Positions 18,348 to 64,000 of a DNA stretch of 64,000 nucleotides are shown piece after piece. The stretch is taken from positions 62,001 through 126,000 of the IMG/VR virus record IMGVR_UViG_3300029945_000001, one strand, 5' to 3'. A model generated the notes under the pieces. It was not told where the DNA came from, made no database searches, and saw nothing but the letters and a program-made list of their open reading frames with translations. Made by a program: the position numbers and the translations under genes. Every line of letters starts with the position of its first letter. The first letter of the stretch is position 1.

Positions 18348-21254
18348 ATGACGGTTCTTTATAAAGAAGATTGGGTAAGGAAAAACGCATTTGTTCATTC
18401 TAATACACAAAATAAGTCATTTATTAGAGCAAGTTTATTATTAGAAAGTATGGGAATTAAGAATTGTCTATTTCCATTAACTATCTATGATAAAGACTTA
18501 ATGAATATAGATCCTCATAAATTAAATGATAATTCAGTAGAATTAAGAATGAGAATAGCTATTGAGTGTAAACGAAATGTTTGGTATTATGTAAGAGAAG
18601 TTGTTAGAGTTGGTGCACAAGGTTCAGATCCTATTCCATTTAATGCAGATCGTGGTAATATAGCCATGATTTGGGTATTTGAAAATAATTTCCATTACAT
18701 GAGTATCCAGCCCAGACAGACTGGAAAAGAACAACCATTAACAGCTAATGTTAAGACTCCAAATGGTTGGATAAAAATGGGTGATATTAAAGTTAGCGAC
18801 GATGTCATTGCCCACGATGGAACAACTGTAAAAGTAAAAGGTGTTTATCCGCAAGGAATTAAACCTGTTTACAAAATAACTTTTGAAGATGGAAGATCTA
18901 CAGAATGCGGTGAAGAACATCTTTGGAAGATCTATAATAAATATGAATTATCACAGAATCCTACAACAGAGGTCGTTTCATTAGATAGAATAAAAGATCT
19001 TATTAATGATTATCCTAATATAAAATCTTTATTAAGTATACCCCTTATTACATCAGAAATAAAAGACGATGTTAATCTTCCAGTAGATCCATATATGTTT
19101 GGTAATTTATGTAGAGGTGAAAATATTCCAGAAGATTATTTAAATGCATCAACTTCTCAGAGGTTATCACTTCTTAGAGGTATTATGACGAATTTATTTA
19201 TATCAAATAAAATAGGAGATATTTCATATTCTGTAGAAAGTTTAAAAGCTGTAAATAATATAAAATATTTAGTCCGTAGTTTAGGCGGAATATGTAGAAG
19301 TGTTGAAAGAGATGATTCTTATGATCTTTATATCAAGTTGAATAACCAACAGAATAAATTAAGTTTAGGTATTTCTAATATAGAATTTGTAGGATATAAA
19401 GAAACACAATGTATTGAAATTGATCATCCTGATCACTTATATGTAACTGATGATTTTGTCGTTACTCATAATACAACATGCGCTGTTGTGTTAACTTCAT
19501 ATGTTATTTATATTAGAGGTAAGAATTTTAACTTTGGATTATATACTAAAGACAGTGATCTTGTTCATGCAAATGTGCAGCGTTTAAAAATGGTTAAAGA
19601 TAATCTTCCTAAATATCTTATTCATAAGTCTACTAGGGATGCTGATAATAAAGAAGGATTGTCTTATAATGTATTAAATAATAACTATATTACGTTTATT
19701 GGATCTAAAGATAAACAGGCCGCCGATAACCTTGGTCGCGGTATGACCGGACCGGCATATCATTTCGATGAGCCAGCTTATACCAATAATATCAATATTA
19801 CATATCCGGTTATGATGTCTTCTACAAATGCTGCTGTCGAATCTGCTCGTAAAAATGGTATGCCGCATTCAAATATATTGACAACAACAGCCGGTCGTAC
19901 TGATACTGATCGTGGTAAATATGCATTTGAATTATTAACAGGATCATTATCATTCAGTGAAAGATTCTACGACTTAAAGAATAGAAAAGAATTGGAAACT
20001 ATTGTTAAAAATAATTCTGGTAATAATATCATCTCTGGTGTATTCTCGCATCTTATGCTTGGATTTAGTAATGAATGGTTAAATGAAAAGATCCGTAACT
20101 CTAATTCAACACAAGACGAAATTAATAAAGATTATTATAACATCTGGAGTACTGGTTCAGAACTCAGTATCTTGAAACAAGAAATATTGAAAAAGATCAA
20201 TGAAAGTATTAGAGAACCAGATCATGTCGAATTTATTCATGGTTATGTCATTAGTTGGTATATAAGTGAAGAAGAAAGAACGTCAGATCACTTTAAGAAT
20301 AAACAATTTGTTTTGGGTATGGATAGTTCAGAAAATATTGGTAGAGATTTTACAGCATTGGTCATGGTCGATATATCAACACTAGAAGTTGTAGCAACAT
20401 TTAAATGTAATGAATCCAGTACAACTAAAATTGCTATTTTTATTAGCGACTTCTTAGTCAAATATAAAAACGTCTTATTTATTCCTGAAAGAAAAAGTAC
20501 TGGTGGTTCTATTACTGATCAGGTTCTTGAAATCTTTGAGAAATATAGGATCAATCCATTTAAACGTATTTATAATAAAGTGGTACAGGAGAGACAGGCT
20601 AATGAATATAAAGATGTTAAAATAGACGATATTGATCTTTTATTAAAATATCCTGCTATTAGAAGGTTCTTAGGATTCACAACTCAAGAAAAGACTCGTG
20701 AATTCTTATATAAGAATGTTCTTAATAAAGCAGCAGAACTCAATGCAGATAAAATCATTGATAAAACATTAGCAAGTGAACTAAGTTGTTTGGCTATTGT
20801 TAATGGTAGAATAGATCACCAGAATGGTAAACACGACGATATGGTTATTGCATATTTATTGTGCTGTTTTGTTATATTCTTTGGTAAGAATTTAGATTAT
20901 TATGGAATTGACATTTCTGCACTGACTGATAATTACGATGTTAATGGTAATAAGATCGATAAAAGATATAGAGATAAACAGATTGCTTTCAGAAAAGAGA
21001 TTTTAAAATTAGAAGATTTAATGGCAAATACAGCAAGTCTCGTACTAAAAGAATATTATAGAAAACAGATAGAAAATCTCAGAACTATTATTGATGAGGA
21101 TCTTGTATTAGAACCTATTAGTGTTGCTGTTGTTAATAGTGTCGTTGAATCTTATGGTAAGCTTTATTCAGCAAATGAAATCAAGTCTAATGATAATTCT
21201 CCCGTTATGTCAGAAACACAAATGTTAAATCTTGTAAAATTACTTCCATTATAA
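18348..21254 (+). CDS. terL: terminase large subunit (phiKZ gp25-like) containing an intein
   Basis: Walker A QPRQTGK|T split by the intein; GRGMT, HFDEP, TTTAG, GMDSSE, RIDH..GKHDDMVIA. Confidence 0.92.
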   Translation: MTVLYKEDWVRKNAFVHSNTQNKSFIRASLLLESMGIKNCLFPLTIYDKDLMNIDPHKLNDNSVELRMRIAIECKRNVWYYVREVVRVGAQGSDPIPFNADRGNIAMIWVFENNFHYMSIQPRQTGKEQPLTANVKTPNGWIKMGDIKVSDDVIAHDGTTVKVKGVYPQGIKPVYKITFEDGRSTECGEEHLWKIYNKYELSQNPTTEVVSLDRIKDLINDYPNIKSLLSIPLITSEIKDDVNLPVDPYMFGNLCRGENIPEDYLNASTSQRLSLLRGIMTNLFISNKIGDISYSVESLKAVNNIKYLVRSLGGICRSVERDDSYDLYIKLNNQQNKLSLGISNIEFVGYKETQCIEIDHPDHLYVTDDFVVTHNTTCAVVLTSYVIYIRGKNFNFGLYTKDSDLVHANVQRLKMVKDNLPKYLIHKSTRDADNKEGLSYNVLNNNYITFIGSKDKQAADNLGRGMTGPAYHFDEPAYTNNINITYPVMMSSTNAAVESARKNGMPHSNILTTTAGRTDTDRGKYAFELLTGSLSFSERFYDLKNRKELETIVKNNSGNNIISGVFSHLMLGFSNEWLNEKIRNSNSTQDEINKDYYNIWSTGSELSILKQEILKKINESIREPDHVEFIHGYVISWYISEEERTSDHFKNKQFVLGMDSSENIGRDFTALVMVDISTLEVVATFKCNESSTTKIAIFISDFLVKYKNVLFIPERKSTGGSITDQVLEIFEKYRINPFKRIYNKVVQERQANEYKDVKIDDIDLLLKYPAIRRFLGFTTQEKTREFLYKNVLNKAAELNADKIIDKTLASELSCLAIVNGRIDHQNGKHDDMVIAYLLCCFVIFFGKNLDYYGIDISALTDNYDVNGNKIDKRYRDKQIAFRKEILKLEDLMANTASLVLKEYYRKQIENLRTIIDEDLVLEPISVAVVNSVVESYGKLYSANEIKSNDNSPVMSETQMLNLVKLLPL
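18729..19472 (+). mobile_element. class 3 intein (248 aa) with degenerate LAGLIDADG domain
   Basis: EQPL..VKTPNGW.KMGDI start; block B CGEEHLW; block F TQCIEID; block G LYVTDDFVVTHN followed by Thr; W-C-T triad; remnants DPYMFG, RLSLLRGIM, LVRSLGG. Confidence 0.9.
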
Positions 21255-57099: not shown

Positions 57100-59214
57100 A
57101 TGTTTTCTATCCTAAATATTTTTTCTATAAAAGTAGAAGAAACTCCAGGTTCTAAATTTGTTACTCTTTCGAATATACAATCAAATAATTTAAGACGAGA
57201 TTTTGTTAAGACATTAGGGTCTCCACTTATTGAAAAATATATGTTACATAAAGCAACATATAATAAATTTGTTATTCATAAGTTTTTTATACCAGATCTC
57301 TACTATATATTAACTAAGATCTTGCTGACAAAAGGGCATATATATACAACTAGATCACACATTAAGGATCTCTTAAAACAAATAGAATTACATACTTGGT
57401 ATAAGTCTGCTTTTGAGCCACCAAAATCAGTACCTTTAAATCTAAGTAGATTGTCTGAATTGTCTAGGCCATTACTTCCTATTCAATTGGAAGCATTAAA
57501 AGAATATAATTTAAAGATTCCTAAGTTAAAATTAAGAGGTTTCTTACTGGATGCAGCGACTGGTAGTGGTAAATCTGGTATGTTACTTGCTATGGGTTTA
57601 TGTTCAGAAGCTAAATTCAAAGTTATTATTTGTCCAAAACATACGATTTCAAAAGTATGGGTCGATGAAGAACTTCCAAAGTCTTTTGGTAAGAAGAATA
57701 AGTTGAAAGTATTTAGGTCAGATGAACAAGATGAAATCGTTCCTGGTTATGATTGGTATTTTATTCATTATGAAGCTATTGGTAAACTATTACAATTCTT
57801 TCATAAACATAAATATCCTTCAGTGTTTATTGGTATAGATGAGTGTCATAATCTTAATGAATTAGGTTCTATGAGAACCAATATTTATATTGAATGTTGT
57901 GAAGCATCAAATGCACAAAACATCGTTCCGGCATCTGGTACTCCACTGAAAGCACTTGGTAGAGAAGTTGTGCCATTGTTACAAGTTACAGATCCGTTAT
58001 TTGATGATTATGCTAAAGATAGGTTCTTAAAAATCTATAGTAGATCGGCAGGATCTGCTGCCCATATCTTACAGAATAGAATATCATTAGTTTCACATAC
58101 AATTCCTAAGTCTGCTATTATGGGATCTGAAAAACCCATTGAAAAAACTATTTCTATTACATTACCAGATAGTGACAAATATACTTTACCGTTTTTAAAA
58201 ATAGAGTGTAAGAAATTCTTTATAGATAAAATGACAAAATATGATAAAGAGATGGATGTACATGAAAAACTATTTATATCGGTTATAAGAGATCACGAAA
58301 GAACATTAAAATCGAAAGAAGATCTTCATGAGTTTAATGTATATCTCGATTATATTAATAAGATAAAGAAAGGATACGATCCTATTACCATGGGTTTCAT
58401 GTCTATTTATTGTAATACTTATGAAAAGACTAAGATTATACCCAATCTACCTAAGGATATAAAAGATAAGTTTATTAAATCTAAATCAGTTGTTAAATAT
58501 GTTAAGATGGTTGTTATGGGAGAATGGTTAGCAGAAATAGGTAGGAAAAGAGTAGAGCTACACAAAGAACTTATTAGACATGCAGGCCTTGATGAAATTG
58601 TTAAAAATGCTGAAAAGAAAACTATATGTTTTAGTAATTATGTTGATGCTATTAAAGAAGGTGAAAGATATTTTAAAGAAGCCGGGTTTAATCCTCTTTG
58701 TGTTTATGGTGATACGAATGCAGATCTTGGTAATATCATAGATAAATTTAAATCAGACAAAACAGTAAATCCATTATTAGCAACAATACAATCTATGTCT
58801 ACTGGCATAACTCTCATTGTTGCAAATATTATTATTTTCTTTAATCTTCCATTTAGAGATTATGAAATGGAACAAGCTATTGCGCGAGCATTTAGACTTG
58901 GACAAGATACTCAAGTTTATGTTTATAAACTATTACTCAATACTAAAGAAGCCAATCTAGCTACAAGACTTGAAGAAATTCTCGAATGGAGTAGATCTTC
59001 TGTTTATGATCTCATGGGACATACTAATAATGAAATGACTAAAGATGAAGATATATTCATTACAGCTATTAATGATAATAATAATATTTCAAGTGATGAA
59101 ATCAAGAAATTGGCTCATAAAGTTGCAGCGAATGAAAATTATGAATTCAATACAAATGCTCACTATTATCAAAATAAATCTTTTTATAATCTTATGTTGA
59201 AATTAAGGGCTTAG
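57100..59214 (+). CDS. SNF2-family (SF2) helicase
   Basis: ATGSGKS, IDECH, ASGTP, QSMSTGITL, QAIARAFRLGQ; AGGAGG RBS before ATG 57100. Confidence 0.9.
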   Translation: MFSILNIFSIKVEETPGSKFVTLSNIQSNNLRRDFVKTLGSPLIEKYMLHKATYNKFVIHKFFIPDLYYILTKILLTKGHIYTTRSHIKDLLKQIELHTWYKSAFEPPKSVPLNLSRLSELSRPLLPIQLEALKEYNLKIPKLKLRGFLLDAATGSGKSGMLLAMGLCSEAKFKVIICPKHTISKVWVDEELPKSFGKKNKLKVFRSDEQDEIVPGYDWYFIHYEAIGKLLQFFHKHKYPSVFIGIDECHNLNELGSMRTNIYIECCEASNAQNIVPASGTPLKALGREVVPLLQVTDPLFDDYAKDRFLKIYSRSAGSAAHILQNRISLVSHTIPKSAIMGSEKPIEKTISITLPDSDKYTLPFLKIECKKFFIDKMTKYDKEMDVHEKLFISVIRDHERTLKSKEDLHEFNVYLDYINKIKKGYDPITMGFMSIYCNTYEKTKIIPNLPKDIKDKFIKSKSVVKYVKMVVMGEWLAEIGRKRVELHKELIRHAGLDEIVKNAEKKTICFSNYVDAIKEGERYFKEAGFNPLCVYGDTNADLGNIIDKFKSDKTVNPLLATIQSMSTGITLIVANIIIFFNLPFRDYEMEQAIARAFRLGQDTQVYVYKLLLNTKEANLATRLEEILEWSRSSVYDLMGHTNNEMTKDEDIFITAINDNNNISSDEIKKLAHKVAANENYEFNTNAHYYQNKSFYNLMLKLRA

Positions 59215-59230
59215 AAAAAGGAGCATCTTT

Positions 59231-59668
59231 ATGGATAAAGATTTTGAATATACTTTTGATACTCTTCCATTTACAGCACCATCCGATGAAGGATTTAGAG
59301 CTGGTGAAACTGATAATTTAAAATGGTATATTAATTGTGAATTACATGAAGTTGTTTCTTACATGGATAATGCTCTTAAAAAAGGATTCGCATTAAAGAC
59401 CGGTAGAGCATATGGTTCTGATGGTAAATTAACTGATCCTAAATATACTGGTCTTTATTATACAAATGAAGATCTTAATAGATATATTGAAAATACAAAT
59501 CAATATCTTAAAGAACATCCAGAACTCAAAGATATAACTGATTCATCTGCTATGATGCCTACTGTTGATACTATTATTAGATCTATGGCAAAGCTTCCAG
59601 ATGATAATATTATTAATATCGAAAGATATAAAAGGCCTCGTCGTGCTATGAGAAATAAAAAAATATAG
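59231..59668 (+). CDS. hypothetical protein
   Basis: AAGGAG RBS. Confidence 0.6.
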   Translation: MDKDFEYTFDTLPFTAPSDEGFRAGETDNLKWYINCELHEVVSYMDNALKKGFALKTGRAYGSDGKLTDPKYTGLYYTNEDLNRYIENTNQYLKEHPELKDITDSSAMMPTVDTIIRSMAKLPDDNIINIERYKRPRRAMRNKKI

Positions 59669-59707
59669 ATAGTATTTATTATATGTTTGTGAAAATGGAG
59701 TCGAAAA

Positions 59708-60031
59708 ATGATTGAAAAAAATATGGACGTCACCGATATCAATGGTGCTAAAAAGAACATCAGCGATCTGAAGGTCTTTGGTAATGGCGATACCTTCCAA
59801 CTTATCTGCAAAGCTAGTTCCCAGGAACAGGGTTGGATGAAGTCGACCAAAGCTATGGAAATCGTTGGTGTTGGCTGTGTTGTCCAGGTGACAACGCAAC
59901 AGCGCAGTCCTGACGGATCGTATGCTGTGGCAGAAGCCGTGACTTTTGTTCCAGGAACAAAGATCATCGGTGATGCTATCAATGGTCGTCGGATCGTTAT
60001 TTTCAATTACAATGATACCGATATCGAATAA
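59708..60031 (+). CDS. conserved phage protein of unknown function
   Basis: GNGDTFQLICKASS..GWMKSTKAM..GC.VQVTTQQ..AEAVTFVPG; GGAG RBS. Confidence 0.7.
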   Translation: MIEKNMDVTDINGAKKNISDLKVFGNGDTFQLICKASSQEQGWMKSTKAMEIVGVGCVVQVTTQQRSPDGSYAVAEAVTFVPGTKIIGDAINGRRIVIFNYNDTDIE

Positions 60032-60147: not shown

Positions 60148-60216
60148 TGTTAAATAAGTTTCAAAATATTTATACATATATATTAATTTATTGGAACCTG
60201 ATCATAAAAAGTTAAA

Positions 60217-61639
60217 CTACAGTTGAATTTCACAGTGTAGCAACCTTCTGCTCTGATCCGCACCGCCCCGCTGTGATCCGTTCTCCAGGAAAATGAGTGT
60301 CCTTTCTCATTTTAGTGTATTAGTCAACTGTGGGCTCTCGACCAAGGTGATGAAAATCATCTAAACCTGGGTATATGTTGAGAGTATAATTAAGATAGTG
60401 TTGTGACGAAGGTAACATCCGCGCCCTTCGCGTCAGGACGGCTAACCACATGCAGGTCAGTGTGCTAGCACAACACCGTAACATCTGCCACTAACATGCA
60501 ATCCGGCGACTATCAGTTTTCGAAGCATGTTTTAAAAGTCCTGATAATGCAGATGTATAGCAAATATCAAGTCGACTTGTAGAAATACAACATTCTGGTC
60601 AAGGTGCATGGAATTAACGGACCTAAACACCTTGTTGCGTCGGTTGACTTGAGAGTTCTCGTGTGGAGTTGTTGTCAATGCCGTGTCCTGGTCCTTGGAG
60701 GGGATGACGCCGTAGAAGATACCAATATGGAATACCGGAATATTCCCACATGAGCACGCTTTGTTTTCATGAGTTTTCTTTCTTTGTCCAAGTTACTGAA
60801 GATGATCTATAGCCATAGATCGAAACCTAGTTACGACGATGGTCTAACAGGCAGGACAAAGTACTGACCAGGTGTGCTGGCGCTGATATTATGCGACGTT
60901 TTATCGTTGCTGTAGATGCTGGCATATCGAAGATGTTTGTTGTGGTAAACACGCCGTTGAGATCAGCTATAGATGATCGATGATGTGGCGGTGTGCAATG
61001 AGATGATCATACGATTCCCAAGAAGGGAACTGTGATTATCTATGACTTATACACGACAGTGATCCATATGTGATCCATTGTGTGTTTGTTCTTTACATTG
61101 TTAATACCACGACGAACGTAATAACTGTGTGTTGTCTGGATAAGGGTCATGTATCCCGCAATCTGGTATCGCACTAACTCTGGTAGATATACAGTTGAGA
61201 CCGTGTCTCTAAATCTACAAGTGAGCATGTGTCTGGTGGGTTTGGGCTGAAAAAATGCCATCTGATCCACCAGACACATCTCGCGAAACCTCTTAAGTGG
61301 CGATACCGTTAGACTGAGACCCAGCTTGCTGACTAGCATTTTGTGCAGTTGGCTATGCGCGATTTATTTCGGGCATCTTCTGGCAGATATGTCGTTCTCC
61401 ACGAACCCTCCAGATCAGAGGACTTGCTCAAGATTGGTATCGTAGAGCAGGTAACTAATTTGTCCTGTAAACTATGTGATGTCGGAAAAGTCAGATCCGA
61501 TGATCTGATCAACATCATACTATCGGATGTAATGCCCCCATGGATGTTAATAGCATTTGCATTATGAGATCGGCAGATATACACATCTGATAGGAGTCGT
61601 ACCCCACACGATGAGCTCTGTGGAATCCAGAGCATCTGC
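60217..61639 (+). ncRNA. structured non-coding block A (back-to-back RNA modules)
   Basis: No credible ORF; about a dozen consecutive domains, each closed by a stem, mostly of 8-13 bp; promoter-like TATATTAA at 60179. Confidence 0.7.
60782..60861 (+). ncRNA. type I hammerhead ribozyme
   Basis: GTTA-CTGAAGA-t-GATCTAT(agcc)ATAGATC-GAAA-CC...GG-TC^TAAC, with stem I extended by CTTTGTCC/GGACAAAG. Confidence 0.85.
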
Positions 61640-61641
61640 AA

Positions 61642-61730
61642 GCGCGTATGGCGAAGCTGGCTGAAACGCATCAGACTTAAAATCTGACACATAAGAAACA
61701 CCGTGGGTTCGATCCCCACTACGCGCACCA
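61642..61730 (+). tRNA. tRNA-Leu(UAA)
   Basis: GCGCGTA/TACGCGC acceptor, TCAGA-CTTAAAA-TCTGA anticodon arm, T arm, CCA; variable region long but weakly paired. Confidence 0.9.
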
Positions 61731-61789
61731 TGAGGGGGTGTAAGTTATAACTTACACCCCTCCACCAACAATTTTCGATGACATACAAT

Positions 61790-61865
61790 GAGCACGTAAC
61801 TCAGTTGGTAGAGTACTCGACTTTTAATCGAGATGTCATGGGTTCGAGCCCCATCATGCTCACCA
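61790..61865 (+). tRNA. tRNA-Lys(UUU)
   Basis: CTCGA-CTTTTAA-TCGAG anticodon arm, 76 nt, CCA; one C.A mismatch in the acceptor stem. Confidence 0.92.
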
Positions 61866-61938
61866 TTTTTTTAAAACAAGAGACGAGCTTATCTATGTCT
61901 TCTTTTAGATATTGATAAACTCATGTTATAAAGGAAAT

Positions 61939-62014
61939 GGACGCGTAGCACAGCGGTTAGTGCCGACCGCTCATAACGGTCTGGTCGTAGGTTCGAATCC
62001 TACCGCGTCCACCA
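61939..62014 (+). tRNA. tRNA with CAU anticodon, probably tRNA-Ile2 (reads AUA after lysidine modification)
   Basis: GGACGCG/CGCGTCC acceptor, GACCG-CTCATAA-CGGTC anticodon arm; lacks initiator features. Confidence 0.85.
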
Positions 62015-62029
62015 ACCTTTTTCCATAAC

Positions 62030-63174
62030 GGTCTAGTTGGAAGTTCAGATCTCTCCGTACTGTAATAGGTAACCTCAGGAGATATAAGCATGACCAGATC
62101 ATGCAGGTTCGTTCTTCATAGATTGAACTTCTAAGACCACATCTGAGGTGCAATGCCTCGGCAGAGATAGCTATGTCATGTAGCATAAGTAAAAAAAACA
62201 CCAACGATGAAGTTGTACTCTCTAAAGAGTTAATGAACATGTTCAGACATCTTAGGTGAACATTTACACCTTCAAAAAGATGGTAGCAACAGTATGGGTG
62301 AGAACAAAGCCATCATGCTGGATATCTGGTAACAGTGTCCAGACCCATGTGCCCCCAAGAAACCATTGCGCTACGAGGATCTAGTGGAATTGATGCCATG
62401 CTTCGCATGCGCACAGGTTATAATAACCACATTGTCCTTATCTGAACATTTTTATTGACTCTCTCGGAGAAAACCCTCGTTTGTTGAAATGTTTATCACA
62501 AAGCTGTTATGACTCAATGACATAACAGTTTACCGCTTAAGGTTAACCATCTATCCCTCATCACCGTAGTACGCCTAGGAGTTGTCCTATGTGGTCCAAA
62601 ATGATGAATGATGAGCGGTGGCGAACAGCCGGGTTTGGAGACTGTGTGATATGGCCTCCTAACTGGGCTCTGTTGTTCTTTCATGCATTGACACCCAGTG
62701 TATCGAGAGAATATCGGTCCGTCTCGAACGGACAACTTTCCTGCTTTAGATCGTATGTTTTGGCATATGTCTTAATCCGCACCGGTCCGGCCGATGTATG
62801 GATATGGGCGTAACTCGTCAACGATCTGCTAACAGGCTGAAGAACATGGAAGGTATACCAGGACTACGATCGCCGGCTCTAACTTAAGTCATCTGGAGTC
62901 ACTCAGGGACTATCCTGCGGTGAACATACGATGAGAGTTATCTTGGGATCATTTCCGTATACACACAACTGCTGTGTCCATAAGTGTTCTGTGTCTGAAA
63001 GCAAGGCATGAAGTGATTTTGTCACCGCCAACCCGCTATGTGGGAGATCCGTGAAAAGGTCTCCCACTACGGTTTCTTTAGTGTAGATTAAGGTGAACAC
63101 CGAACACGGAATGGGCCTCCGCGCAACACAATCCCCCGATGTTGCTATGTTCGGTGTTCTCCTTAGTTTATACA
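62030..63174 (+). ncRNA. structured non-coding block B
   Basis: 20/21-bp stem 62227-62247/62441-62461, 12-bp stem 63095-63106/63148-63159 and many internal hairpins. Confidence 0.65.
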
Positions 63175-63242
63175 TATTAAATTCTTCAGGCAGCTGCTTA
63201 TTTTTTATTTCAAAGATAAATATATATTAATACATTGAATTC

Positions 63243-63322
63243 GCCGCAGTATCTCCTTGGCCTTCTAAGCTATTGAAAGAGTAACTGGACACATGGGGGT
63301 TCGAATCCCTCCTGCGGCGCCA
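63243..63322 (+). tRNA. atypical tRNA-Arg(UCU)-like RNA lacking a canonical D arm
   Basis: Perfect acceptor GCCGCAG/CTGCGGC+GCCA, T arm GGGGG-TTCGAAT-CCCTC, anticodon loop CTTCTAA; only 8 nt between acceptor and anticodon stems. Confidence 0.7.
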
Positions 63323-63393
63323 ATCATTTAAAATATTCTAATCCGGGATCGTCGGTCTGAGTCTGACCTGGAGACCACTAAGATACCATATAT

Positions 63394-63438
63394 CTTCTAA
63401 GCGGCAGGTCGTAGGTTCGAGTCCTACTGGGATCGCTA
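63394..63438 (+). pseudogene. 3' half of a canonical tRNA-Arg(UCU); 5' half missing
   Basis: CTTCTAA-GCGGC-AGGTC-GTAGG-TTCGAGT-CCTAC-TGGGATC-GCTA with no matching 5' acceptor, D or anticodon strand. Confidence 0.7.
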
Positions 63439-63872
63439 AGCTGCCATACATCTTCTTCAGTTTCGGGTCCTTCTGAGTAAGGCATTTGAGTATGCACACC
63501 GATCCATGAAAGTGGGGACAGTGTATCGGTTCTTTTAAAAGTTTTGGCTCCGTTAACTGAGTCTGGACTGCTCACCGGCATGTATGTGTCAGTGTTGTCG
63601 GAAAAGCATACAAATGCATTAATGGTTAGAGGGTGTCCATCTTCGGATCGGCATTTTGGCCATAGTCGCTAGAAATCAGTGAAACGGGCTGGTCTCGGGA
63701 TAAATTGTAAGTCTGACGACCGAGATAAGATTAATGACTTACCAAAGTCCTGGTGTGTTAAAAAACTTATGGTGATGTAACCAGGGATGCGAACTATGTT
63801 TGCCATCGGACGCCAAGCGATCGATGAAACCATTCTAAATTCCACTTAACTTTTAGGTCGATGTTATCGGGC

Positions 63873-63909
63873 TGTCACATGCATGGACGTAATGTCCATG
63901 TATGTGACA
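63873..63909 (+). terminator. hairpin ending the RNA cluster
   Basis: TGTCACATGCATGGAC-gtaat-GTCCATGTATGTGACA followed by TTATTTTTT. Confidence 0.75.
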
Positions 63910-64000
63910 AGTTCATTTATTTTTTAATACATTTTGAGTTTTATACAAAAAATAAATATATATTACTTATTTAGAAATATGGAGTGACTATCATGAATTA

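What the first reader, a model, noticed from the sequence alone, without database searches (positions are those of the whole stretch)
63243..63322. tRNA-Arg(UCU)-like RNA with the D-loop motif apparently moved to the 3' side of the anticodon arm
Seen: perfect 7-bp acceptor stem, G discriminator, CCA, canonical T arm and 7-nt CTTCTAA anticodon loop. Only TATCTCCT (8 nt) lies where the D arm should be, and a 22-nt segment TTGAAAGAGTAACTGGACACAT follows the anticodon arm. That segment contains AACTGGA, like a tRNA-Arg D loop, and its GAG or GGA can pair with CTC or TCC of the short 5' linker. It sits directly behind its own promoter-like motif (63223). Known: G18G19 contact the T loop, and A20 is a major ArgRS identity element. 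Inference: a topologically rewired tRNA that keeps the L shape and Arg identity, perhaps evading host tRNA-targeting nucleases. Intact ends argue against random decay.
Basis: partly seen in the sequence, partly recalled or inferred. Interest (0 to 1): 0.8.

Follow-up and report, generated by a model that had tools for sequence, protein, structure and literature searches.

The report
Rewired phage tRNA-Arg, new architecture
This is a real and conserved phage tRNA whose D-arm half has moved to the other side of the anticodon arm; more than 100 phage genomes from soil, sea, gut and peat carry this unreported tRNA shape, which standard gene finders miss.

Summary
Window 63243-63322 has a perfect 7-bp acceptor stem, G73, encoded CCA, a canonical T arm and a CUUCUAA anticodon loop. 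It has no local D hairpin. ARAGORN misses it, and Rfam's tRNA model only reaches its threshold (29.2 against 29 bits).

It is not decay. The same layout occurs in more than 117 viral contigs and in cultured Streptomyces, Microbacterium and crAss-like phages. Among 185,579 species genomes it occurs in only 10 MAG contigs; six of the eight checked lie in dense tRNA arrays.

Covariation shows that the 5' linker (C-U-C) pairs with G-A-G downstream of the anticodon arm (99% paired, five Watson-Crick combinations). This makes a D stem whose 5' strand and D loop (A14, A15, G18G19, N20, A21) now lie between the anticodon arm and U48.

Identity elements follow the anticodon. All 16 Arg-type copies have A20 and all 78 Ile/Met-type copies have U20 and A73. 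These tRNAs fill empty anticodon slots in phage tRNA sets. Here it is the only Arg tRNA seen, and AGA makes up 49% of the phage's Arg codons.

Most likely it is a working tRNA-Arg(UCU) with a rewired core. Expression, charging and any role in evading host nucleases are untested. I found no prior description.

The parts
63215..63238 (+). Phage promoter-like element (core TATATATTA at 63221-63229, followed by ATACATTG). It ends 5 nt before the tRNA 5' end.
   Evidence: 19 of 20 copies of the core in the window are on the + strand, mostly just upstream of ORFs or RNA genes. It resembles the phiKZ/201phi2-1/OBP promoter consensus TATATTAC...GTG (PMC7058600). Function is inferred.
63243..63249 (+). 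Acceptor stem, 5' strand (GCCGCAG; tRNA positions 1-7).
   Evidence: Perfect 7 bp with 63312-63318. All 7 pairs show compensatory changes in the family.
63250..63251 (+). U8 A9 equivalents (TA), invariant.
   Evidence: Invariant in 48 diverse copies.
63252..63256 (+). Strand equivalent to the D-stem 3' strand (T-C-T-C, positions 22-25) plus C26. 63253-63255 pair with 63279-63281. 63252 lies opposite 63282 (U.U).
   Evidence: 99.3% and 99.2% of cells paired. All three pairs show double changes in the larger set. U.U becomes A-U in L028:1331-1407. RNAalifold predicts the helix de novo.
63257..63273 (+). Anticodon arm: U.U plus 4 bp, and 7-nt loop CUUCUAA with U33, anticodon UCU (63264-63266) and A37.
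   Evidence: The 4 pairs are 100% paired with compensatory changes.
63274..63278 (+). Linker T-GAAA (position 44 plus an invariant GAAA). It takes the place of the first part of the variable loop and leads back to the D stem.
   Evidence: GAAA is invariant in the main family. Other subfamilies use GA, ACTAA or CGTTAACA. Its tertiary role is inferred.
63279..63282 (+). Strand equivalent to the D-stem 5' strand (G-A-G-T, positions 10-13), here placed 3' of the anticodon arm.
   Evidence: Covaries with 63253-63255.
63283..63293 (+). D-loop equivalent AACTGGACACA: A14, A15, G18 G19 (63287-63288), A20 (63289, the arginine identity base) and A21.
   Evidence: TAA, GG and CAT are invariant. The base after GG is A in 16/16 Arg-type copies and T in 78/78 Ile/Met-type copies. 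The same holds in the divergent subfamilies.
63294..63294 (+). U48 equivalent, the likely Levitt-pair partner of A15.
   Evidence: Invariant T directly before the T stem. The pairing is inferred from canonical tRNA geometry.
63295..63311 (+). T arm: GGGGG / TTCGAAT / CCCTC.
   Evidence: The loop is TTCRANY in 94 of the 95 unique copies.
63312..63322 (+). Acceptor stem 3' strand (CTGCGGC), discriminator G73 (63319) and encoded CCA (63320-63322).
   Evidence: The discriminator is mostly G or A in Arg-type copies (13 of 16; T in 3) and A in all Ile/Met-type copies. CCA is encoded in only 16 of 95 copies.
63873..63920 (+). Intrinsic terminator-like hairpin plus T run. It probably ends the transcription unit that starts at the 63221 promoter.
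   Evidence: 17-bp stem. RNA contigs matching 63543-63809 within this unit are present in peat metatranscriptomes.

Best explanation
Window 63243-63322 encodes a functional elongator tRNA-Arg(UCU) of a peat phiKZ-like jumbo phage. It belongs to a widespread and essentially phage-restricted family of tRNAs with a rewired core.

Shown:
- The block made of the D-stem 5' strand plus the D loop (positions 10-21) does not lie between A9 and position 22. It lies after the anticodon arm, directly before U48.
- The gene order is: acceptor 5' strand, U8 A9, [22-25, 26], anticodon arm, [44 + GAAA], [10-13, D loop with G18G19 and N20], U48, T arm, acceptor 3' strand.
- The D stem therefore forms between two distant strands and encloses the anticodon arm. 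The secondary structure is a three-way junction.
- Every nucleotide that builds the canonical elbow and core is retained: U8, A14, A15/U48, G18G19, A21 and the T-loop T54-Psi55-C56-A58 positions.

Inferred:
- It folds into the usual L shape. The three new chain junctions (9 to 22, 47 to 10, 21 to 48) join residues that already lie close together in a canonical tRNA.
- It is transcribed from the phage promoter 5 nt upstream and trimmed by RNase P and 3' exonucleases to the encoded CCA.
- It is charged by the host ArgRS through A20, C35, U36 and G73.
- It reads AGA, the phage's most used arginine codon.

Why phages keep this shape is open. Evasion of host enzymes that recognise the canonical D-arm or variable-loop geometry is one possibility.
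For: 1. All canonical tRNA parts except a local D hairpin are present.
2. The layout is conserved in more than 117 IMG/VR contigs and in cultured phages of Streptomyces, Microbacterium and Bacteroides.
3. The structure is supported by covariation. 98.4% of cells are paired and the covariation score is 0.85, against 0.20 for shuffled and at most 0.17 for slid controls. The trans D-stem is 99% paired with CG, UA, GC, AU and UG variants. RNAalifold finds the same structure unaided.
4. A covariance model of the family scores the window copy at 89.7 bits and every canonical tRNA in the window at 23.6 bits or less.
5. Identity elements track the anticodon. Arg-type copies (UCU, CCU, UCG, ACG) have A20 in 16/16, and a G or A discriminator in 13 of 16 (T in 3). 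Ile/Met-type copies have U20 and A73 in 78/78. Divergent subfamilies follow the same rule. This matches the published identity sets.
6. The tRNAs are non-redundant. In 29 arrays with 8 or more canonical tRNAs, the rewired anticodon is duplicated in only 5, and 4 of those are CAU. L042 has 21 canonical tRNAs but no Arg. Stanimal's canonical Arg tRNAs are only UCG and ACG, while its rewired ones are CCU and UCU.
7. In this phage it is the only Arg tRNA found in the 22 kb examined around the island: Ser, Leu, Lys, Met, [Arg], Thr, Asn. AGA makes up 49% of Arg codons.
8. It sits behind a phage promoter motif, in a unit whose downstream part appears in metatranscriptomes.
Against: - There is no direct evidence of expression, end processing, modification or charging. 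The four metatranscriptome runs gave no contig over 63175-63341. They also lack phage-specific contigs over the canonical tRNA-Lys and tRNA-Met, so this says little either way.
- The single-sequence fold is not more stable than shuffles (z = -0.79), and its minimum-energy structure differs in the core.
- The 3D argument rests on known tRNA geometry and was not computed.
- The link between A20 and the Arg anticodon may rest on few evolutionary events. The tree is unresolved and a single origin is not excluded.
- U.U at positions 27-43 and 13-22 and only three Watson-Crick pairs in the D stem make for a weak core.
Confidence: 0.75

Rival explanations
1. It is a tRNA-shaped RNA that is conserved but not used for decoding. 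It could be a decoy that soaks up a host tRNA-targeting nuclease or modification enzyme, a regulator, or a primer or processing signal for the neighbouring non-coding RNAs.
For: - It lies in an ORF-free island that yields abundant non-coding RNAs.
- Phage tRNAs are known to counter tRNA-targeting defences (eLife 2023 PMC10264068 and Nat Commun 2024 PMC11555353, listed).
- Charging has not been shown.
- A decoy would also keep an anticodon loop and identity-like features if the enemy enzyme reads them.
Against: - The family keeps everything needed for translation: a 7-bp acceptor stem, a discriminator matched to the anticodon class, U33 and purine 37, and T-loop and G18G19 elbow partners.
- Its anticodons complement the canonical tRNAs of the same arrays rather than duplicate them.
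- The window copy matches the phage's top Arg codon.
- No partner protein is conserved nearby. The most common neighbour is an HNH endonuclease, in 22 of 91 loci.
Confidence: 0.13
2. It is a decaying tRNA-Arg pseudogene that lost its D arm and gained an insertion in the variable region.
For: - ARAGORN does not call it.
- Rfam's score is borderline.
- A clearly degenerate tRNA-like remnant lies 60 nt downstream at 63382-63435.
- The single-sequence fold is unremarkable.
Against: - The same odd layout, with invariant motifs and compensatory changes, is found in more than 100 unrelated phage contigs from different environments.
- The copy is identical in at least four IMG/VR assemblies, and the surrounding 801-nt stretch is held in at least 18 peat runs.
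- Both ends and the encoded CCA are intact.
Confidence: 0.02
3. The gene is a scrambled precursor. RNA cleavage and ligation swap the two internal blocks and produce an ordinary cloverleaf tRNA, by analogy with permuted or split tRNA genes.
For: - Swapping block [22-47] with block [10-21] would give a normal cloverleaf with a 4-bp D stem, an 11-nt D loop and a 6-nt variable loop. This follows from the sequence.
- Some carrier phages encode RNA ligase and polynucleotide kinase (Stanimal).
Against: - Known permuted tRNA genes are circular permutations resolved through a circular intermediate. That mechanism cannot exchange two internal blocks while keeping both termini.
- No splice-like motifs (bulge-helix-bulge or group I) are present, and no Rfam intron family matches.
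- Most carrier loci show no ligase nearby.
- The invariant linker GAAA and the alternative linkers in the subfamilies look like structural solutions for a direct fold.
Confidence: 0.03
4. It is a D-armless tRNA with a long, type II-like variable arm. The 22-nt segment would form its own hairpin rather than pair with the 5' linker.
For: Rfam's alignment treats the segment as a variable-region insertion. The length of 22 nt is in the range of type II variable arms.
Against: - No internal pairing of the segment is conserved.
- The segment's GAG covaries with the 5' linker instead.
- The segment carries D-loop signatures (A14, A15, G18G19, N20), not a stem-loop.
Confidence: 0.02

Closest known systems
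Canonical class I bacterial or phage tRNA (Rfam RF00005), specifically tRNA-Arg(UCU)
   Same: 7-bp acceptor stem, discriminator and CCA. 5-position anticodon stem with a 7-nt loop (U33, A37). T arm with TTCRANY. All conserved core nucleotides (U8, A14, A15/U48, G18G19, A21). Arg identity set: A20, C35, U36, G73.
   Different: The D stem is not a local hairpin. Its 5' strand and the D loop lie 3' of the anticodon arm, so the secondary structure is a three-way junction and the chain connectivity of the core is changed. The usual variable loop is replaced by N-GAAA on one side and a direct A21-U48 link on the other.
D-armless mitochondrial tRNAs (for example metazoan mt-tRNA-Ser(AGY); PMC9427863, PMC4013460)
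   Same: Three-helix secondary structure with no local D hairpin. Still thought to reach an L-like shape.
   Different: Mitochondrial forms have lost the D stem, the G18G19 elbow contacts and most conserved core bases, and they need co-evolved partner proteins. The phage family keeps a covarying D stem and the full set of core and elbow nucleotides, only in a different order. It presumably uses ordinary bacterial enzymes.
Circularly permuted and split tRNA genes (red alga Cyanidioschyzon merolae; Nanoarchaeum). Cited from my own knowledge, not checked here.
   Same: Segments of the tRNA are encoded in a non-canonical order.
   Different: In those cases the mature tRNA is canonical after processing, and the permutation is circular or in trans. 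Here two internal blocks are exchanged, both termini are in place, and the RNA is predicted to function as encoded.
tRNAs with novel cloverleafs (allo-tRNAs with 8/4 or 9/3 acceptor/T branches; Mukai et al. 2017, PMC5389517)
   Same: Non-canonical tRNA architectures found by mining genomes and metagenomes, some of them in phages. Supported by comparative analysis.
   Different: Those change helix lengths within the normal strand order. They have long variable arms and Ser-like or His-like identities. The present family has a normal 7/5 branch and changes the strand order of the core.
Phage tRNAs that escape anticodon nucleases through anticodon-loop changes (van den Berg et al. 2023, PMC10264068)
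   Same: Phage-encoded tRNAs that differ from host tRNAs in ways that could defeat host enzymes.
   Different: The documented escape involves point changes in the anticodon loop of otherwise canonical tRNAs. Here the anticodon loop is ordinary and the body is rewired. No link to defence has been shown.

Membership tests
tRNA (canonical cloverleaf, Rfam RF00005) | 7-bp acceptor stem with an unpaired discriminator (and CCA, encoded or added) | tested here: met
   63243-63249 pairs with 63312-63318 at 7/7. G73 and CCA are encoded. 80 of 95 family members have 7/7 pairs.
tRNA (canonical cloverleaf, Rfam RF00005) | T arm: 5-bp stem and 7-nt loop with T54, Psi55, C56 and A58 | tested here: met
   GGGGG/TTCGAAT/CCCTC. 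The loop is TTCRANY in 94 of the 95 unique copies.
tRNA (canonical cloverleaf, Rfam RF00005) | Anticodon arm: 5-bp stem and 7-nt loop with U33 and purine 37 | tested here: met
   4 Watson-Crick or GU pairs plus a conserved U.U at positions 27-43. Loop CUUCUAA.
tRNA (canonical cloverleaf, Rfam RF00005) | D arm as a local hairpin between position 9 and position 26 | tested here: not met
   Only 7 nt lie there. Rfam's alignment deletes the D arm. The D stem forms with a strand 3' of the anticodon arm.
tRNA (canonical cloverleaf, Rfam RF00005) | Score at or above the curated gathering threshold; detection by standard finders | tested here: inconclusive
   29.2 bits against a 29-bit threshold. ARAGORN calls neither this copy nor any of the 8 relatives tested.
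tRNA (functional definition) | Processed to mature ends, aminoacylated, and used by the ribosome | not testable with these tools
   RNA contigs do not cover it or the neighbouring canonical tRNAs. This needs tRNA-seq and charging assays.
Bacterial tRNA-Arg identity set | A20 in the D loop, C35, U/G36 and A/G73 (PMC9976931) | tested here: met
   A at 63289 directly after G18G19. C35 at 63265, U36 at 63266, G73 at 63319. All 16 Arg-type relatives have A after GG, against 0 of 78 Ile/Met-type. Calling this base '20' relies on the D-loop analogy.
D-armless (mitochondrial-type) tRNA | Loss of the D stem and of the G18G19/T-loop elbow contacts, with a short connector instead | tested here: not met
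   A covarying 3-4 bp D-stem equivalent and an invariant GG are retained.
Type II tRNA (long variable arm) | The variable region forms its own stem-loop | tested here: not met
   No conserved internal pairing. The segment pairs with the 5' linker instead.
Permuted or split tRNA gene | The mature RNA is canonical after circularisation or trans-splicing; processing motifs at the junctions | not tested
   No intron or bulge-helix-bulge family matched. The sequence of the mature RNA is unknown.

The most novel reading that the evidence does not exclude
Phages maintain a separate tRNA architecture, a topological isomer of the L-shaped core. It is charged by ordinary class Ia synthetases (ArgRS, IleRS, possibly MetRS) and decodes AGA/AGG/CGN and AUA/AUC. 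Because its D-arm and variable-loop connectivity differ, it would be invisible or resistant to host enzymes that read the canonical tRNA body, such as tRNA-targeting defence nucleases, modification enzymes or quality-control factors. This would give the phage a protected supply of decoders for its preferred codons.
Probability: 0.25. Interest if true: 0.95.

Novelty: new variant of a known kind. Interest (0 to 1): 0.88.

Why it matters
The cloverleaf strand order is among the most conserved features in biology. Known exceptions are degenerate mitochondrial tRNAs, or gene-level permutations that are repaired before use.

A family that keeps every core nucleotide but changes the chain path would have three consequences if it is functional:
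- It would show that the tRNA L shape can be built with a different topology and still serve bacterial synthetases, EF-Tu and ribosomes.
- It would give a natural test bed for which enzymes read tRNA connectivity and which read tRNA shape.
- It would offer a new scaffold for engineered tRNAs.

Practical points:
- These genes are missing from phage annotations, or mis-called (tRNA-Phe in Mildred21, tRNA-Leu in EGole). Phage tRNA repertoires and codon-compensation analyses are therefore systematically incomplete for Ile(AUA) and Arg(AGR).
- The model built here (R1) separates the family cleanly from canonical tRNAs.
- Several carriers are cultured phages, so the idea can be tested directly.

Tried and rejected
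- **Megablast of 62000-64000 against GenBank phages:** no match. The phage itself has no close cultured relative; helicase identity is at most 35%.
- **The search for related loci with the neighbouring helicase:** it returned only four identical copies of the same phage, which is no use for comparison.
- **Single-sequence folding:** uninformative (z = -0.79).
rejected (66% paired).
- **Long-variable-arm reading and pseudogene reading:** rejected by the covariation.
- **Search for a conserved partner protein within 4 kb in 91 loci:** none found. The top cluster is an HNH homing endonuclease in 22 loci. The other clusters are terminase, portal and GroES-like genes of one marine phage group.
- **Metatranscriptome contigs:** no coverage of the tRNA, but none of the canonical neighbours either. 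This is no evidence in either direction.
- **Tree of 48 copies, to count Arg/Ile identity switches:** too few columns. The result was 4 changes, with a single origin not excluded.
- **Literature:** nine full-text searches found no description of this architecture. The library covers open-access papers only, so a description elsewhere cannot be excluded.
- **Rfam 15:** no family other than tRNA matches here.

Full report
**What is at the coordinates**

The sequence at 63243-63322 reads as follows:

| Segment | Sequence |
|---|---|
| Acceptor 5' strand | GCCGCAG |
| 5' linker | TATCTCC |
| Anticodon stem 5' | TTGGC |
| Anticodon loop | CTTCTAA |
| Anticodon stem 3' | GCTAT |
| Linker | T GAAA |
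| Pairing strand | GAGT |
| D-loop-like segment | AACTGGACACA |
| U48 equivalent | T |
| T arm | GGGGG TTCGAAT CCCTC |
| Acceptor 3' strand | CTGCGGC |
| Discriminator and tail | G CCA |

- The acceptor stem is a perfect 7 bp.
- The T arm and the 7-nt anticodon loop (anticodon UCU) are canonical.
- There is no local D hairpin.
- ARAGORN finds four ordinary tRNAs in the window (Ser, Leu, Lys, Met) but not this one.
- Rfam's tRNA model scores it 29.2 bits against a 29-bit threshold. It gets there by deleting the D arm and treating the 3' segment as an insertion.

**Genomic setting**

- The window is an AT-rich (about 30% G+C) phiKZ-like jumbo phage. It has a phiKZ-type tail sheath, virion proteins, ribonucleotide reductase and an SNF2-type helicase that is at most 35% identical to cultured jumbo phages.
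- It comes from peat. Identical contigs are in IMG/VR, and the 801-nt stretch around the gene is held by at least 18 peat metagenome runs.
- The gene lies in an ORF-free stretch with higher G+C (43%), at 60150-63900, which also holds the canonical tRNAs.
- Five nucleotides upstream ends a copy of the motif TATATATTA. That motif occurs 19 times on the + strand and once on the - strand, typically just before genes. It matches the published promoter consensus of phiKZ-group phages, TATATTAC (PMC7058600).
- A strong terminator-like hairpin follows at 63873-63909.

**Homologues**

A sensitive blastn of the region against GenBank phages matched more than the T arm. It matched the whole odd middle part, in unannotated gaps of tRNA arrays of:
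- Streptomyces phages (Stanimal, TunaTartare and about 80 others);
- Microbacterium phage Zooman;
- the crAss-like Kehishuvirus tikkala.

I then searched with a pattern that fixed only the 3' segment and the start of the T arm.
- It hit only 10 contigs among representative genomes of 185,579 bacterial and archaeal species. All 10 are MAG contigs. Of the eight I scanned, six sit in dense, phage-like tRNA arrays and two have no ARAGORN-called tRNA in the 8 kb fetched.

I parsed 95 unique full-length copies. All share this layout:
1. acceptor 5' strand;
2. TATCxyC;
3. anticodon arm;
4. N-GAAA;
5. y'x'G-TAA-NN-GG-NNN-CAT;
6. T arm;
7. acceptor 3' strand.

The acceptor strands were not part of the search pattern. 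They still pair 7/7 in 80 of the 95 copies.

**Structure**

The dinucleotide xy in the 5' linker covaries with y'x' after the anticodon arm:

| xy / y'x' | Copies |
|---|---|
| TC/GA | 34 |
| CC/GG | 35 |
| GG/CC | 10 |
| CG/CG | 6 |
| GC/GC | 2 |
| CA/TG | 1 |
| AC/GT | 1 |

On a curated alignment of 48 diverse copies (A3):
- The four-helix structure has 98.4% of cells paired.
- Its covariation score is 0.85, against 0.20 for shuffled and at most 0.17 for slid controls.
- The new helix is 99.3% paired.
- RNAalifold predicts exactly this structure with no input from me.

On 83 distinct model-aligned copies, all three pairs of the new helix show compensatory changes. This includes C-G to A-U at the otherwise invariant pair. 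In one copy the flanking U.U becomes A-U, which suggests a 4-position stem.

A covariance model of the family (R1) scores the window copy at 89.7 bits. Every canonical tRNA of the window scores 23.6 bits or less.

Divergent subfamilies keep the same topology with different linkers: GA, ACTAA/ACCAA or CGTTAACA in place of N-GAAA. The conserved feature is therefore the topology, not just one sequence.

**Reading the structure in tRNA terms**

This section is inference from established tRNA geometry.
- The strand after the anticodon arm looks like the D-stem 5' strand followed by a D loop: y'x'GU = 10-13, then A14, A15, YU, G18, G19, N20, N, A..A21. The invariant U before the T stem is then U48.
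- The 5' linker is U8, A9, then UCxy = 22-25, then C26.
- The block 10-21 has therefore changed places with the block 22-47.
- All nucleotides that make the conserved tertiary contacts are kept: U8-A14, A15-U48, G18/G19 with the T loop, and A21.
- The three new chain junctions (9 to 22, 47 to 10, 21 to 48) connect residues that are neighbours in the canonical fold.
- A duplication of 10-47 followed by two deletions would produce this order.

I could not compute a 3D model with the tools available.

**Evidence that it works as a tRNA**

*Identity elements follow the anticodon.*
- The 16 copies with Arg anticodons (UCU 6, CCU 5, UCG 3, ACG 2) all have A right after G18G19. Thirteen have a G or A discriminator and three have T.
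- The 78 copies with UAU (65), GAU (7) or CAU (6) all have U there and A73.
- The divergent subfamilies obey the same rule.
- These are the bacterial identity sets: Arg uses A20, C35, U/G36 and A/G73; Ile uses A73, U20 and others (PMC9976931).

*The rewired tRNAs are not redundant.*
- In 29 loci with 8 or more canonical tRNAs, a canonical tRNA with the same anticodon is present in only 5. Four of those are CAU, where several genes are normal.
- L042 has 21 canonical tRNAs and no Arg except the rewired one.
- Stanimal has canonical Arg(UCG) and Arg(ACG), and rewired Arg(CCU), Arg(UCU) and Ile(GAU).

*The window copy fits its phage.*
- The island encodes Ser(UGA), Leu(UAA), Lys(UUU), Met, the rewired Arg(UCU), Thr(UGU) and Asn(GUU). 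No canonical Arg tRNA was found in the 22 kb examined around it.
- AGA is 49% of 593 Arg codons in 50 ORFs.

**What is not shown**

- Four peat metatranscriptome runs contain exact-match contigs for other parts of the island, and none for the flanking protein genes.
- Nothing covers 63175-63341. The canonical Lys and Met tRNAs also lack phage-specific contigs, as expected for libraries that lose small structured RNAs.
- Expression, processing, charging and the 3D fold all remain to be shown.
- A tree of the 77-nt sequences is too poorly resolved to say how many times identity switched between Ile and Arg.
- No partner protein is conserved next to the gene.

**Comparison with known systems**

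- It works like, and is best classed as, a tRNA. It fails one defining feature of the cloverleaf, the local D hairpin.
- It is not a mitochondrial-type D-armless tRNA, because the D stem and elbow contacts are kept.
- It is not a type II tRNA, because it has no variable-arm hairpin.
- It is not like the allo-tRNAs, because its 7/5 acceptor/T branch is normal.
- It is unlikely to be a permuted gene that is repaired, because an exchange of internal blocks cannot be undone by circularisation.
- Rfam 15 has no separate family for it.
- GenBank records leave it unannotated or mis-call it: tRNA-Phe(gaa) in Mildred21 and tRNA-Leu in EGole.
- Nine full-text literature searches found no description.

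**Verdict**

Most likely (about 0.75) this is a functional phage tRNA-Arg(UCU) that belongs to a previously undescribed, phage-specific family of Ile/Arg(/Met) tRNAs with a transposed D-arm segment. The suggestion that the rewiring protects against host tRNA-targeting enzymes is attractive but untested (about 0.25).

Noticed in passing
window 60150-63900 (pieces 60845-61247, 60875-61725, 62632-63036, 63543-63809): The ORF-free, relatively GC-rich tRNA island yields abundant exact-match RNA contigs in four peat metatranscriptomes, while the neighbouring protein genes (59000-60000) yield none. Adapter sequences mark discrete ends at 60845, 61240, 61725 (the 3' end of tRNA-Leu), 62733, 63017 and 63805. 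No Rfam family matches. The 60845-61240 piece folds much better than shuffles (z = -3.7). These look like unknown, highly expressed structured RNAs of a jumbo phage.
   Followed up: partly
window 63382-63435: A second, much shorter tRNA-like element lies 60 nt downstream. It has an acceptor-like stem (6/7 pairs), a perfect T arm (GTAGG/TTCGAGT/CCTAC) and a 23-nt connector that contains CTTCTAA with no flanking stem. Rfam tRNA scores it 24.7 bits and R1 20 bits. It could be a decayed tRNA-Arg(UCU) copy or a minimal tRNA-like RNA. I found it only in this phage.
   Followed up: partly
window, 19 sites on the + strand (e.g. 15814, 17633, 31564, 44575, 50555, 60177, 63221, 63957): The motif TATATATTA(C/A)T...TTG recurs almost only on the + strand, just upstream of genes. 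It matches the phiKZ/201phi2-1/OBP promoter consensus. It would allow a promoter map of this uncultured phage.
   Followed up: partly
L137:27114-27191 (Stanimal 87113-87190); L128:7407-7480; L129:1377-1450; L076:310-387; L014:11632-11708; L061:4235-4314: These are divergent subfamilies of the same rewired topology. They have other linkers (CGTTAACA, GA, ACTAA/ACCAA) and lengths of 74-80 nt, and they score 32-54 bits with R1. They keep the rule A20 with Arg anticodons and U20 with Ile anticodons. The true family is broader than the search pattern.
   Followed up: partly
L136:396-471 (Streptomyces phage Mildred21 91367-91442); Streptomyces phage EGole 75271-75334: GenBank annotates the rewired Arg(UCG) gene of Mildred21 as tRNA-Phe(gaa). 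The EGole copy is annotated as tRNA-Leu. In about 80 sister phages the same genes carry no annotation.
   Followed up: yes
L137 (Streptomyces phage Stanimal 73923-74530, and genes 129, 201, 205): In Stanimal the rewired Ile(GAU) gene starts 10 nt after a 'nucleotidyl transferase' gene. The phage also encodes a Ro-like RNA-binding protein, an RNA ligase and a polynucleotide kinase, that is, tRNA repair and quality-control functions. Any link to the rewired tRNAs is unknown.
   Followed up: no
window 18348-21254: The 968-aa ORF matches terminase large-subunit families only at its N terminus (residues 3-129) and again near residues 696-840. In between it has DnaC-like and primase-like ATPase matches. 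This suggests an inserted or fused domain.
   Followed up: no
L030 (IMGVR_UViG_GVMAG-M-3300007345-3_000001): One rewired Ile(UAU) copy lies on a 5.6-kb contig labelled as part of a giant-virus MAG. It is probably a mis-binned phage fragment.
   Followed up: no
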